Assembly: GCA_002269645.1 (NCBI GenBank)
Contig: NIVC01001215.1
Location: 19,635 to 83,634, forward strand
DNA from: Macrostomum lignano
Taxonomy: Eukaryota
DNA length: 64,000 nucleotides
Direction: 5' to 3'
Positions 18,635 through 21,672 of the stretch are shown here, in pieces; position 1 is the first letter of the stretch, and each line of letters begins with the position of its first letter. Below the pieces are notes generated by a model that searched no databases, was not told the DNA's origin, and saw only the letters and a list, made by a program, of their open reading frames with translations. The translations under genes and the position numbers were made by a program.

Positions 18635-21600
18635 TCACATGATTGACTCAGAATCATTTGCGCCAGCCATAGCCTTCTTGTTAGCCTCAGCCTCAGCCTT
18701 AGCCTCAGACTTAGCCTTAGCCTCAGCCTTAGCCTTGGCGCTGTCCACAGCCCTGGCAACCGCGGCATCGTCCAGCAGCAGGCGGGTCTCCTCGGCGAAC
18801 TCCGCGGCCCGGTGCGCCAGCTCGTAGACGCTCCTCGGAGCTCCATCGGCGGTGCGCAGCCGCTGCACCTTCTCCTCCAGCGCGTCGATCTCCAGCTGCA
18901 TGGCGTGCTTCTCCTCGTTGACCGACCAGACCCACAGGATGATCCAGGCGCCCTCGCTGCTCAGAATCCTGTGCTCACGCTCAACCAGGCACCTGGCCTC
19001 CTCATTCTTGTTGTCCATCGCCGCTGGGAAGAAGCTCAACTTTTTGTTTCTGTCGAAATGCTTCCTGAGGTCTTCGCTTAGCGACTCCACAGTGCATTTG
19101 CTCGACCCGGCTTGATACAAAGCGACCTGCTTCTCCATTTCGGCTTCTGAGTGGTCTTTGTAGGCGCTGCTCTTCTTGTACGCGAATGGAAAGTACATCA
19201 CAGGGCGAAAGTGCACACTTGACTGAACTTCCAAATTGAAATTCTTCCAGGCGTGGTCCACGGCCTTGTGCGAGTTCTCCAGCGTGACCTTGAGCACCTT
19301 TGTCTCTTTCTCGCGCTCTGCTTTGATGTGATGCCGCGTCACTTTAAGCAGATCTTTTCGCGGGTACTTGTCCAGCCCCAGAGCCTTCTTGACCTCCTTG
19401 CAGAGCGTCTTGAACTTGCGCTCGGCATCTTGTTGGGCCTTTCTGTACTCATCGTGCATCTGGCTGCTGGATTCCCCGTCCGAGCCCTTGGCCGGTTTGT
19501 ACTGCATTCGCTTCTTGATGAAGAACGAACTGCTGCTGGTTTTTAAGTTCAGCAGCCGAGCTGCCAGCTCGTACTGCGCCTGCTGGTGCAGTAGTGGCTC
19601 AGTCTGAGGAGCATCTGGCACAGCCTGGGGAACATCTGACACAGCCTGAGTAGCAATATCTGACACAGCCTGAGGAGGAGCATCTGACACAGCTTGAGGA
19701 GGAGCATCTGACACAGCGTGCAGCACAGCTAGTAAGCTTTCGGCAACACTATCTCTTGTTGTTCGTTCCTTCACATCTTGAAGAAATTTCTTGACTAAGT
19801 CAGCAGCATTCTTGCACTCCAGCAAAAGACATTTTACCAGCCCATCTTGCTTCTCCTTGAAGCTCAGCCGCTGCCATCGGCTCTCCAGCATGAACAAAAC
19901 TGAGTCCGCAATGAGCGCACTCCTGTGATTCAGTTTTTCGTCGAGTGTCTCAAACAGTTTTATTGCTTCGTCGAATTGCTCTGCTTCTAGAAGAAGAATT
20001 CCGAGCTGCTCAGTAGACAGCTGGTGATTCGGTTCTGCCTGAAGGCACTCTGTGTAAGCTCGTATCGCCGATTCAGTGAGCTGTCGGGCCCCTTCAAAGT
20101 TGCCCACTTTTCTTTCGCACTTCGCCCGGACAGACTGGCGCAGAGCGTGGAAACATTTCGCCTCGAAGTCTGTCTTGTGCCCAAGCAGAGTCTCCAAATT
20201 CCGCCATTTGAACGGACTGAGGCAGCCTCTGACGTTCGGCACCTCATCCTGAGCATACTCATTCAGAGCCCATGCGATGCACTCCACACCCTGAGCCACC
20301 CGACCCACCGTGGCCAGAAAGTAGCCCTTCTCCGCCAGTATTTGGGCTGAGTGGGACGGCCTCAAATTTCTCAGCCGCAGCGAGTCGTAGCGCTGGCAGA
20401 TCCAGGCGACGTGCTCCTCCTTGGTCCGAGCTGTGCCAGCGGTGGCTCCGATCCCAGCTGCAGTCAGCACGCCATAAAATGCGAAAACACTATGGCGGCC
20501 AGGATTCCTGCGGCTTGAATTGAGTCGGTGGCAACAATGGCTACAGCAACGGCCAGGACCGCCATAGCAGAAATGATTCCTGGGTGGAAGACGGCCAAGC
20601 TGACTCCAGACTCTGTGTCCGCGCTTGACACGGCTGGGTCCTGGATCAAGTCAATCAGATATTTCGCCGCCCAGATGTTCCTCTCAGGAGCTGCTTTCCT
20701 GAAGTTCTTGATAGCCAAGCCAAAGTTTTTGTTGCTAAGGTGCCAGCGCGCCACTTGGTCATAAAAATCCGGGCTGTCGTGAGATTCGCCAGGCTGAAAC
20801 TTTAAAACAGTTGCAACCACCTGCTCCACAGAGCGGATGATCTCGTTTTCTTCTGCAGTTCTCTCTGACTTCGCGTTCTTGCCGCCTCTCAAGTCCCATA
20901 AAATTCTGCAGACCTTGAGGCAAAGCCTGAATGTCTCTACCAGTCCCGGATCTGTCTTGGAGCGGCAGGAATTGCTGGCGCTCTCCACCAGCTCCAAGCA
21001 CTTGCTGTGCATTTGGTCCTTGCTGATGATTGCTTCGGCGTACCGTGCCTGGAAAAGAGGTCGCACCTGGTCGTAGGCCGGCTTGCTCGCGCTGGCTTCC
21101 GCTTTTTCCCATAGCTTCAGCTCCGGACCGTCAGCCGAGCTGATGAAGTCTCGGTTCCTGCGAATCCTGGATCTGACAATCGCGAGACCGAAGAGCCAGA
21201 GAAAGTTCTCCGGCTCTTTCGCATTTGCTTCTTTTAGAAAGTCTTCGACTTCGAAGAGCTTTGAGTAGCCCAGGCGCAGCTTGATCCAGCCGATGGATCC
21301 GTGGAACATAGCGGATGTGTCGGGTCGGCCCCACTCAGCCTCCAACTCAGCGACATCATCTTTCCAACCTACTGGGAAGCCGTTGCAACTTTGCAGTAAT
21401 TTTATTCTCAGCCGAGCTGTCTTGATCAGGTATGTAGCGTCTACGAAATTGAAATAATTTGGAGAATTTTGCAGCTTCTCGGCTTCAGTCAGGATCTCCA
21501 GACTCTTCGGCAGGTCCACAACAGCCTGGTGAGTGTGCAGCAGCGCAAGAGCCACCAGGTGCACCGTCTCCAGCCACGGCTCGCTCTGCCTCTTCCACTT

Positions 21601-21672
21601 GAACTTCTCAATCAAGTCTGTGACGTCACTGAGCTGGCTGATGTCGGGGAGCCGCTGGAAGTGGCTGTCCAT
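18635..21672 (-). CDS. ~1012-aa intronless IFIT-like TPR protein with internal hydrophobic hairpin and putative HEPN-like C-terminal domain
   Basis: ORFs 21672-20464 and 20470-18635 merge if one base is added to the homopolymer at 20484-20487. IFIT-like motifs SHF near the N-terminus and GWIKLRLG..FLKEANAKEPENFLWLFGLAIVRSR; further TPRs (AIRAYTECLQAEPNH..QLGILLLEAEQFDEAIKLF). Confidence 0.75.

What the first reader, a model, noticed from the sequence alone, without database searches (positions are those of the whole stretch)
18635..21672. IFIT-like TPR protein with a putative HEPN-like effector: candidate interferon-independent antiviral sensor-nuclease
Seen: an intronless ~1012-aa ORF in an intron-rich region. 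The N-terminal half has IFIT-like motifs (SHF; GW..LRLG..A...EPEN...GLAI..SR). The C-terminal ~250 aa read VTLENSHKAVDH..MYFP..FFP..WIILWVWSVNEEKH. Known: vertebrate IFITs bind 5'-triphosphate or cap-0 RNA through TPRs and have no catalytic domain; HEPN RNases use an R/N-x4-6-H motif and are common defence effectors. Inference, from memory and not a search: the LEN....D / YFP / W..L..N..KH pattern resembles a widespread bacterial HEPN-like family. That would make this a one-protein RNA sensor plus RNase in an animal group without interferon.
Basis: partly seen in the sequence, partly recalled or inferred. Interest (0 to 1): 0.8.

Follow-up and report, generated by a model that had tools for sequence, protein, structure and literature searches.

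The report
Flatworm IFIT-like gene, not HEPN
This stretch of the flatworm Macrostomum lignano genome holds one copy, split by a reading-frame change, of a small invertebrate gene family whose front half resembles vertebrate antiviral IFIT RNA-binding proteins and whose back half is a conserved helical domain of unknown kind, with no sign of the proposed HEPN RNA-cutting enzyme.

Summary
The window is Macrostomum lignano contig NIVC01001215.1. The "1012-aa ORF" is two minus-strand ORFs in different frames: 402 aa (21672-20464) and a 671-codon open frame (20650-18635). A paralogous locus reads through the equivalent junction in one frame, so they derive from one gene. The frame change lies in a hydrophobic insert unique to this copy.

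The gene belongs to a small, intronless, tandemly duplicated family. It was found only in M. lignano and in two ENA assemblies of an unidentified lower-GC organism.

The IFIT idea holds at family-profile level. IFIT5, IFIT1 and IFIT2 are the only natural PDB proteins matched, in register from the N-terminal CHFxW-type motif. IFIT5 and IFIT1 still match when that motif is removed.

The HEPN idea fails. A confident model (pLDDT 81, pTM 0.84) is all-helical with no significant PDB or viral fold match. No conserved R-x4-6-H exists. There are no HEPN hits in Pfam, PADLOC or NCBIfam, and no bacterial relatives. NxxKH is conserved, within an R-E / W-x3-W / N-x2-K-H / H-x3-E-x2-E constellation.

Paralogues end in RGG repeats or CCCH zinc fingers, which suggests RNA-directed function. 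The family is interesting; this copy is broken or mis-assembled.

The parts
18635..21672 (-). Whole gene: one member of the IFIT-like-TPR plus C-terminal-domain family, interrupted by one reading-frame change.
   Evidence: ORFs. Its halves are homologous to the paralogous locus L002, which reads through the equivalent junction in one frame. It is the only family copy in the window.
20464..21672 (-). ORF1, 402 aa plus stop. It holds the N-terminal IFIT-like TPR part and ends in a hydrophobic tail. The database holds a 422-aa 5'-partial product of this frame (P0002).
   Evidence: It is 43% identical over 359 aa to L002 ORF 8037-9815 (E 4e-82).
21178..21672 (-). Region aligned, through the family profile, with IFIT5 residues 13-175 and IFIT1 residues 7-172 (subdomain I). 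It starts with the degenerate motif MDSHFQRLP, where relatives have L-ECHF-W-P.
20467..20610 (-). Hydrophobic Ala/Val/Ile/Gly-rich tail of ORF1 (aa 355-402). It is absent from every relative. The frame change lies within the wider stretch where both frames are open (20467-20650).
   Evidence: Kyte-Doolittle 19-residue mean reaches 2.28. Translation. The segment is a gap in relatives. No other copy exists in the loci held.
18635..20650 (-). ORF2 open frame, 671 codons plus stop. It holds the rest of the TPR region, the conserved C-terminal domain and a low-complexity tail.
   Evidence: It is 41% identical to P0001 (M. lignano BOX15_Mlig019237g1) over 439 columns (E 7e-87).
19928..20128 (-). TPR units recognisable by Pfam, just below the curated cut-off.
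   Evidence: TPR_19 at E 9.9e-5 with 23.0 bits against a cut-off of 25; TPR_2 at 21.8 bits.
19606..19717 (-). In-frame 24-nt tandem repeat (4.8 copies) encoding the AVSDAPPQ-type insert. It is absent from the paralogue.
18761..19588 (-). Conserved C-terminal all-alpha domain (276 aa) of no known family.
   Evidence: AF2 with a 31-sequence alignment gave pLDDT 81.1 and pTM 0.84. No PDB or BFVD match with E below 1. 26 relatives with E up to 1e-3.
18764..19003 (-). Most conserved core of that domain, about 80 aa. It carries R-E-(H), W-x3-W, N-x2-K-H (NEEKH at 18905-18919) and A-H-x-A-A-E-F-A-E.
   Evidence: Column counts of 28-31 of 31. Translations.
18638..18760 (-). Low-complexity Ala/Lys/Glu tail, including an 18-nt repeat at 18681-18736. 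It stands where paralogues carry RGG repeats or CCCH zinc fingers.

Best explanation
The locus is one copy of a lineage-restricted, intronless, tandemly duplicating gene family.

Shown:
- The family was found in Macrostomum lignano and one other unidentified eukaryote.
- Its proteins, about 860-1120 aa long, join an IFIT-like N-terminal TPR array to a previously undescribed all-helical C-terminal domain.
- That domain carries an enzyme-like or ligand-site-like set of invariant polar residues: R-E, W-x3-W, N-x2-K-H and H-x3-E-x2-E.
- In several paralogues the domain is followed by RNA-binding tails (RGG repeats or CCCH zinc fingers).

Inferred mechanism, not shown: the TPR array holds RNA, probably RNA 5' ends as in IFIT1 and IFIT5. 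The C-terminal domain supplies a second nucleotide- or RNA-contacting site, possibly catalytic. The tails add general RNA affinity. Together this would make an interferon-independent RNA-surveillance protein. The C-terminal domain is not a HEPN RNase.

State of the window copy: as assembled it is interrupted once. The frame changes inside a copy-specific hydrophobic insert. The sequence as it stands therefore encodes only a 402-aa N-terminal fragment with a membrane-anchor-like tail. The C-terminal domain is still a perfectly open frame that keeps every family-invariant residue. This means either a very recent disabling or truncating mutation, or an insertion/deletion error in the assembly.
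For: - Two ORFs in different frames.
- Paralogous locus L002 reads through the equivalent junction in one frame. Its two parts match ORF1 (43% identity, E 4e-82) and ORF2 (41% identity, E 7e-87).
- Full-length relatives align to both halves.
- IFIT link: the full-length profile hits IFIT5 at 8.4e-6 and IFIT1 at 1e-5 to 3e-5, colinear. With the N-terminal 200-position profile IFIT5, IFIT1 and IFIT2 are the only natural proteins matched across it. IFIT5 (2e-4) and IFIT1 (1e-3) persist after the CHFxW motif is deleted.
- C-terminal domain: confident all-alpha model, with invariant residues at 28-31 of 31 sequences.
- RNA-binding tails: RGG repeats in P0001 and P0008. P0007 and P0033 are named 'C3H1-type domain-containing' by UniProt.
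- Purifying selection in an informative pair of relatives: dN/dS 0.30 at dS 0.10.
- Tandem copies and six intronless relatives.
- Assembly quality: only 63.95% error-free bases by REAPR (PMC5730564).
- L002 also carries exactly one frame change, at a different place.
Against: - The IFIT similarity is remote (E about 1e-5). It is carried by the family profile only; ORF1 alone finds nothing.
- The position equivalent to the RNA-binding residue K150 of IFIT5 is Arg in the window copy and its two closest paralogues but Cys or Ser in the other members. The R186 equivalent lies outside the significant alignment.
- No structure of the N-terminal part was predicted, so the RNA channel is untested.
- No expression or infection data were available.
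- The window copy lacks an RGG or CCCH tail, and its N-terminal motif is degenerate (SHFQR against CHFxW).
- The function of the C-terminal domain rests on conservation pattern and domain neighbours only.
Confidence: 0.55

Rival explanations
1. One reading: the C-terminal about 250 aa is a HEPN-type RNase related to a widespread bacterial family. The protein would then be a one-chain RNA sensor plus nuclease.
For: The domain is all-helical. It has conserved His, Lys, Asn and Arg residues, including NxxKH. It sits behind an RNA-binder-like TPR array.
Against: - No R-dominant and H-dominant column pair has the R-x4-6-H spacing.
- Foldseek against PDB gives no hit with E below 1. The only HEPN entry named as such in the list, sacsin HEPN 3o10_C, appears at E 7.8, probability 0.02 and TM 0.16 or less.
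- There are no HEPN families among 31 members in Pfam, none in PADLOC and none in NCBIfam.
- A profile search of 1.84 billion representative proteins gave 26 hits. Every hit whose source was looked up came from M. lignano or the ENA assemblies, and all aligned as family members.
- The prokaryotic genome scan found no relative.
- In the model, NxxKH ends a helix (residues 215-228). In HEPN domains the motif begins a core helix (my recollection, not checked here).
Confidence: 0.04
2. An ordinary TPR scaffold protein. The IFIT resemblance would be convergent or generic TPR similarity, with a function unrelated to RNA or immunity.
For: E-values are modest. ORF1 alone gives no IFIT hit. Earlier claims of invertebrate IFITs turned out to be generic TPR proteins (PMC3688568). 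The K150 equivalent is not conserved across the family.
Against: - Among 177,635 distinct PDB sequences, the only natural proteins matched over the N-terminal 160 residues are IFIT5, IFIT1 and IFIT2.
- All match in the same register, beginning at the family's N-terminal CHFxW-type motif.
- IFIT5 and IFIT1 persist when that motif is removed.
- Other hits are designed consensus TPRs that match a single helix.
- RGG and CCCH tails in paralogues point to RNA.
Confidence: 0.25
3. The window copy is a dead pseudogene, or a neo-functionalised truncated gene. Its only product would be the 402-aa N-terminal fragment with a new hydrophobic, tail-anchor-like end. The downstream domain would be untranslated.
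For: The frame change lies in an insert that no relative has. The database's product for this locus stops at the ORF1 stop and reads straight through without an intron. The tail is strongly hydrophobic.
Against: ORF2 remains open for 671 codons and keeps all family-invariant residues. Any inactivation must therefore be very recent. The assembly is error-prone, and a second paralogue shows a similar single frame change.
Confidence: 0.4

Closest known systems
Vertebrate IFIT1 / IFIT5 / IFIT2 (PDB 3zgq, 4hou, 6c6k, 5w5h, 4g1t)
   Same: - An N-terminal L-x-CHF-x-W-type motif is followed by a colinear TPR subdomain I (profile 7-173 aligns to IFIT5 13-175).
- Weaker colinear matches continue to IFIT5 residue 363.
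- Both are multi-copy, tandemly arranged gene families.
- The coding sequence is held in one large exon in the relatives fetched.
- An RNA-directed role is plausible.
   Different: - The proteins are about twice as long.
- They carry an extra conserved C-terminal domain of about 280 aa that IFITs lack.
- Some paralogues carry RGG or CCCH tails.
- The host is a flatworm, outside the jawed vertebrates in which interferon genes have been found (PMC3688568).
- Similarity is only at remote-profile level (E about 1e-5).
- The IFIT5 K150 equivalent is not conserved family-wide.
- In the window copy the motif is SHFQR.
HEPN-domain RNases (for example sacsin HEPN 3o10, and, from my own knowledge, RNase L/Ire1 KEN, Cas13 and bacterial HepT/Abi families)
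   Same: Both are all-alpha with conserved basic and His residues. HEPN domains are often fused to sensor modules in defence proteins.
   Different: There is no R-x4-6-H motif, no fold match, no HMM match and no prokaryotic relatives.
RNA-binding antiviral or regulatory proteins with CCCH fingers or RGG boxes (from my own knowledge: ZAP/ZC3HAV1, TTP-type CCCH proteins)
   Same: Paralogues P0004, P0007 and P0033 continue after the C-terminal domain into Cys/His-rich modules; UniProt names P0007 and P0033 C3H1-type. P0001 and P0008 continue into long RGG repeats.
   Different: These tails are absent from the window copy, which ends in an Ala/Lys/Glu repeat. Pfam did not detect the zinc fingers. 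No homology to ZAP itself was tested.

Membership tests
IFIT | N-terminal L-x2-L-x-C-H-F-T-W-type motif at the start of the protein. | tested here: inconclusive
   The motif is present in relatives: LECHFTW in P0008, VECHFKW in P0013, LECHFKW in P0022 and FECPFSW in P0010. It aligns exactly to the IFIT5 and IFIT1 motif. In the window copy and its two closest paralogues only H-F and the following Pro survive (MDSHFQRLP).
IFIT | Sequence-profile similarity to solved IFITs that is significant, colinear and better than to other natural TPR proteins. | tested here: met
   Full-length profile: IFIT5 8.4e-6, IFIT1 1e-5 to 3e-5, the top four hits. N-terminal profile: IFIT5 1.1e-4, IFIT1 1.1e-3, IFIT2 0.043, the only natural full-span hits. 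Motif-deleted profile: IFIT5 2e-4, IFIT1 1.2e-3. Met for the family profile only, not for ORF1 alone.
IFIT | Basic RNA 5'-end pocket residues (IFIT5 K150 and R186 are critical; PMC13197388). | tested here: inconclusive
   The K150 equivalent is Arg in the window copy and its two closest paralogues (GWIKLRLG, GWILLRCG, GWIQMRCS). It is Cys or Ser in the other members. The R186 equivalent lies outside the significant alignment.
IFIT | Three-subdomain TPR clamp enclosing an RNA channel. | not tested
IFIT | Induction by interferon or virus, and binding of 5'-ppp or cap0 RNA. | not testable with these tools
   No expression or binding data were available.
HEPN | Conserved R-x4-6-H catalytic motif. 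| tested here: not met
   No R-dominant and H-dominant column pair has a spacing of 5-7. Sporadic R-x6-H occurrences appear in about a third of the sequences and at differing sites.
HEPN | Four-helix up-down bundle superposable on solved HEPN domains. | tested here: not met
   The model has pLDDT 81.1 and pTM 0.84. The best PDB match is E 1.9 at probability 0.08. Sacsin HEPN 3o10_C appears at E 7.8 with TM 0.16 or less.
HEPN | Match to a HEPN-clan HMM or to a bacterial defence family. | tested here: not met
   Pfam on 31 members gave TPR families plus scattered weak hits to unrelated families, none of them HEPN. PADLOC gave 0 and NCBIfam gave 0 relevant hits. No prokaryotic relatives were found.
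TPR superfamily | Pfam TPR repeats above the curated cut-off. | tested here: met
   In relative P0008, TPR_2 scores 38.6 bits against 27 and TPR_14 scores 32 against 23.5. In the window copy the best is just below cut-off: TPR_19 at 23.0 against 25.

The most novel reading that the evidence does not exclude
An IFIT lineage exists outside vertebrates, so it is older than or independent of the interferon system. In it, the RNA-end-binding TPR clamp is covalently joined to a previously undescribed helical domain. That domain's invariant R-E / W-x3-W / N-x2-K-H / H-x3-E-x2-E residues would form a new kind of RNA- or nucleotide-processing or cap-binding site. This would be a sensor-effector in one chain, though not a HEPN one.
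Probability: 0.15. Interest if true: 0.8.

Novelty: new variant of a known kind. Interest (0 to 1): 0.5.

Why it matters
IFITs are textbook interferon-stimulated genes. The one survey read here found them only in jawed vertebrates, where it placed their origin (PMC3688568). A flatworm family with a specific IFIT-like N-terminus would join Mx as an 'interferon-era' effector with deeper roots (PMC11789081). From my own knowledge, viperin, OAS and cGAS-STING are further examples.

It would also give comparative immunology a candidate RNA-surveillance protein in a tractable, transgenic flatworm model. Separately, the C-terminal domain is a well-conserved, confidently modelled fold with no detectable relatives, and so is a candidate new domain family. 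The particular copy in this window matters less, because it is interrupted.

Tried and rejected
- The first AF2 run, with a 2-sequence alignment, gave pLDDT 47.7 and was unusable.
- The third word-indexed homologue search, with a 29-sequence alignment, returned only P0001. The family members came from the exhaustive representative search instead.
- Transposon or virus-like origin: there are no LTRs or terminal inverted repeats around the gene. Large ORFs elsewhere in the window are ordinary cellular genes.
- Intron as the cause of the frame change: this cannot be excluded from sequence alone. However, the database's product for this locus reads straight through to the ORF1 stop, and the six relatives fetched from the ENA assemblies are single ORFs.
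- A small mobile insert at the junction: only an 11-nt imperfect inverted repeat and a 19-nt imperfect direct repeat were found, which is not convincing. No other copy exists in the loci held.
- Weak hits dismissed: EAD11 at E 0.037 and SHNi-TPR at 0.022; DUF6576 at 0.074; CBM_20 at 0.0085 on the paralogue's extra N-terminus.
- BFVD fold search: nothing.
- ORF1 alone against PDB: no IFIT hit.
- Literature: no paper links IFIT to Macrostomum or cites the ENA assemblies. An 'IFIT' mention in a mollusc immunome paper was IFITM.
- The organism behind ERZ25074608 and ERZ26859043 could not be identified.
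Full report
**What is at the coordinates.**
The minus strand of 18635-21672 does not carry one 1012-aa ORF. The span is 3038 nt, which is not a multiple of three. It holds two long open frames:
- ORF1 runs from the ATG at 21672 to a stop at 20464-20466 (402 aa).
- In another frame, an open stretch runs from 20650 to the stop at 18635-18637 (671 codons).

Both frames are open over 20467-20650. 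SHF is at the very start of ORF1. VTLENSHKAVDH, MYFP, FFP and WIILWVWSVNEEKH are in ORF2.

The window is Macrostomum lignano contig NIVC01001215.1 of assembly GCA_002269645.1. The database holds a 422-aa, 5'-partial product of the ORF1 frame that ends at the ORF1 stop.

**The two ORFs are one gene.**
ORF2 is 41% identical (E 7e-87) to the M. lignano protein BOX15_Mlig019237g1 (P0001). In that protein's locus (L002), an upstream ORF (8037-9818) is 43% identical to ORF1 (E 4e-82). It runs on in the same frame into the stretch homologous to the start of ORF2, for example KYDHIKWICQRYDSL and AEKGYFLAVNGRLAEGAQCIAWALNEYAGDE.

So ORF1 and ORF2 descend from a single coding sequence. Between the two homologous parts the window copy has an extra Ala/Val/Ile/Gly-rich hydrophobic segment that no relative has. 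Its 19-residue hydropathy mean reaches 2.28. The frame changes once within the stretch where both frames are open.

The L002 paralogue has its own single frame change at a different place, and its annotation starts only at an internal Met.

Three causes are possible, and sequence alone cannot decide between them:
- The assembly is a Canu PacBio assembly with only 63.95% error-free bases by REAPR (PMC5730564), so an insertion/deletion error is plausible.
- A real, very recent mutation is equally plausible, because the change lies in a copy-specific insert.
- An intron is less likely. The recorded product reads straight through, and the six relatives fetched from the ENA assemblies are single ORFs.

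ORF2 keeps every family-invariant residue.

**The family.**
An exhaustive profile search of 1.84 billion representative proteins with the C-terminal domain found 26 proteins with E up to 1e-3. By name and accession, several are M. lignano paralogues (P0001, P0003, P0004, P0007, P0008). The rest of those looked up come from ENA assemblies. The five ENA genes traced to their contigs lie in assemblies ERZ25074608 and ERZ26859043, whose loci have 37-40% GC against about 50% here. That points to another, unidentified organism.

Full-length members are 862-1117 aa. The six ENA genes fetched are each encoded by a single uninterrupted ORF. Members occur in tandem. L003 holds a full gene, a fragment and a further copy. 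L002 holds a second gene plus the start of a third M. lignano paralogue that is 63% identical to ORF1.

One informative pair of close copies has dN/dS 0.30 at dS 0.10, indicating purifying selection. The word-indexed searches found only P0001 and the window's own product.

**N-terminal half: IFIT-like.**
Pfam sees only TPR repeats. They are above cut-off in P0008 and just below it in the window copy. Three profile searches against all PDB sequences bear on the IFIT link:
- Full-length members plus ORF1: the top four hits are IFIT5 (E 8.4e-6) and IFIT1 (1e-5 to 3e-5). The main match is profile 7-173 to IFIT5 13-175, starting at the aligned motif L-ECHF-W against LECHFTW. Weaker colinear matches follow at IFIT5 218-302 and 327-363.
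- First 200 positions only: IFIT5 (1.1e-4), IFIT1 (1.1e-3) and IFIT2 (0.043) are the only natural proteins matched across the whole span, all in register. Every other hit is a designed consensus TPR matching a single helix.
- CHFxW motif removed: IFIT5 (2e-4) and IFIT1 (1.2e-3) remain.

The window's ORF1 alone finds no IFIT, and its motif is degenerate (MDSHFQRLP). The residue equivalent to IFIT5 K150, which is critical for RNA binding (PMC13197388), is Arg in the window copy and its two nearest paralogues. It is Cys or Ser in the other members. Conservation of the RNA pocket is therefore undecided.

The published view is that IFITs arose in jawed vertebrates and that earlier invertebrate candidates were generic TPR proteins (PMC3688568).

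**C-terminal domain: conserved, helical, not HEPN.**
With a 31-sequence alignment, AlphaFold2 gives a confident model of window 18761-19588. It has mean pLDDT 81.1 and pTM 0.84, and is made of twelve helices, two of them over 30 residues long.

Evidence against HEPN or any known fold:
- Foldseek against PDB finds nothing with E below 1 (best 1.9, probability 0.08). The sacsin HEPN domain (3o10_C) appears only at E 7.8 with TM 0.16 or less.
- BFVD gives nothing.
- There is no HEPN family among the 31 members in Pfam, nothing in PADLOC and nothing relevant in NCBIfam.
- A profile search of PDB sequences hits only TPRs upstream of the domain.
- No relative was confirmed in a scan of 185,579 prokaryotic genomes.

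No R-dominant and H-dominant column pair has the R-x4-6-H spacing.

The invariant set is:
- R204, E205 and I208
- W215 and W219
- N224, K227 and H228
- H259, E263, F264 and E266
- upstream, R77 and D111

So many invariant charged and aromatic residues in sequences that are otherwise 20-30% identical suggest an active or ligand-binding site rather than a mere spacer. This is my inference.

**Mechanism.**
Shown: the architecture, the conservation, and the IFIT-specific similarity. Also shown are the RGG repeats in P0001 and P0008 and the CCCH-type fingers after the domain in the P0007/P0033 group, which UniProt names C3H1-type; P0004 carries a similar Cys/His-rich extension by eye.

Inferred: the family binds RNA, with the TPR array acting like IFIT1 or IFIT5 on RNA ends. 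The C-terminal domain would provide a second RNA- or nucleotide-directed site, possibly catalytic.

Not supported: that this site is a HEPN RNase.

As assembled, the window copy would yield only the N-terminal fragment with a hydrophobic end.

**Verdict.**
- The HEPN half is not supported.
- The family is a new variant of a known kind: an IFIT-like protein with an undescribed C-terminal domain, outside vertebrates.
- The copy in the window is broken or mis-assembled.

Noticed in passing
window 22079-22796; 21890-21931; about 24965-26700: Three repeat arrays lie just upstream of the gene: a 45-nt tandem repeat (16 copies, 92% matches), a (CAGTA)n microsatellite, and a long 12-nt-period array of over 100 copies. 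They create long spurious ORFs on both strands.
   Followed up: partly
window 43361-44437 and 49081-50028 (minus strand): Two neighbouring ORFs each encode a Cys-loop neurotransmitter-gated channel ligand-binding domain plus the start of the membrane region (E 3e-44 and 7e-46). This looks like a tandem pair of receptor genes.
   Followed up: no
window 54546-55403 (+); 6737-7585 (-): One ORF encodes a class II aldolase/adducin N-terminal domain (E 5e-39). Another encodes a C2H2/C2HC zinc-finger protein. Both are ordinary cellular neighbours. Nothing virus-like was seen among the large ORFs scanned.
   Followed up: no
L002 8037-8423: The paralogue's ORF has 129 extra N-terminal residues with a weak, sub-threshold match to the CBM_20 starch-binding domain (E 0.0085, 16.3 bits against a cut-off of 23.3). 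The window copy has no counterpart.
   Followed up: partly
L003 5001-7610 against L007 3001-5667: Between these two close copies, synonymous divergence is 0.146 in the N-terminal part but 0.014 in the last 300 codons. This suggests gene conversion homogenising the C-terminal domain.
   Followed up: partly
P0012 (ENA, 570 aa): This protein contains two complete, near-identical C-terminal domains in tandem. The YExCA-type motif falls at residues 19 and 293, and the AEFAE motif at 271 and 545. It is either an internal duplication or an assembly artefact.
   Followed up: no
L002 18394-19866: An ankyrin-repeat gene lies between two family members on the M. lignano contig NIVC01000672.1.
   Followed up: no
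window 20458-20468 and 20599-20609: An 11-nt inverted repeat (91% complementary, 130 nt apart) brackets much of the copy-specific hydrophobic insert. It may be chance.
   Followed up: no
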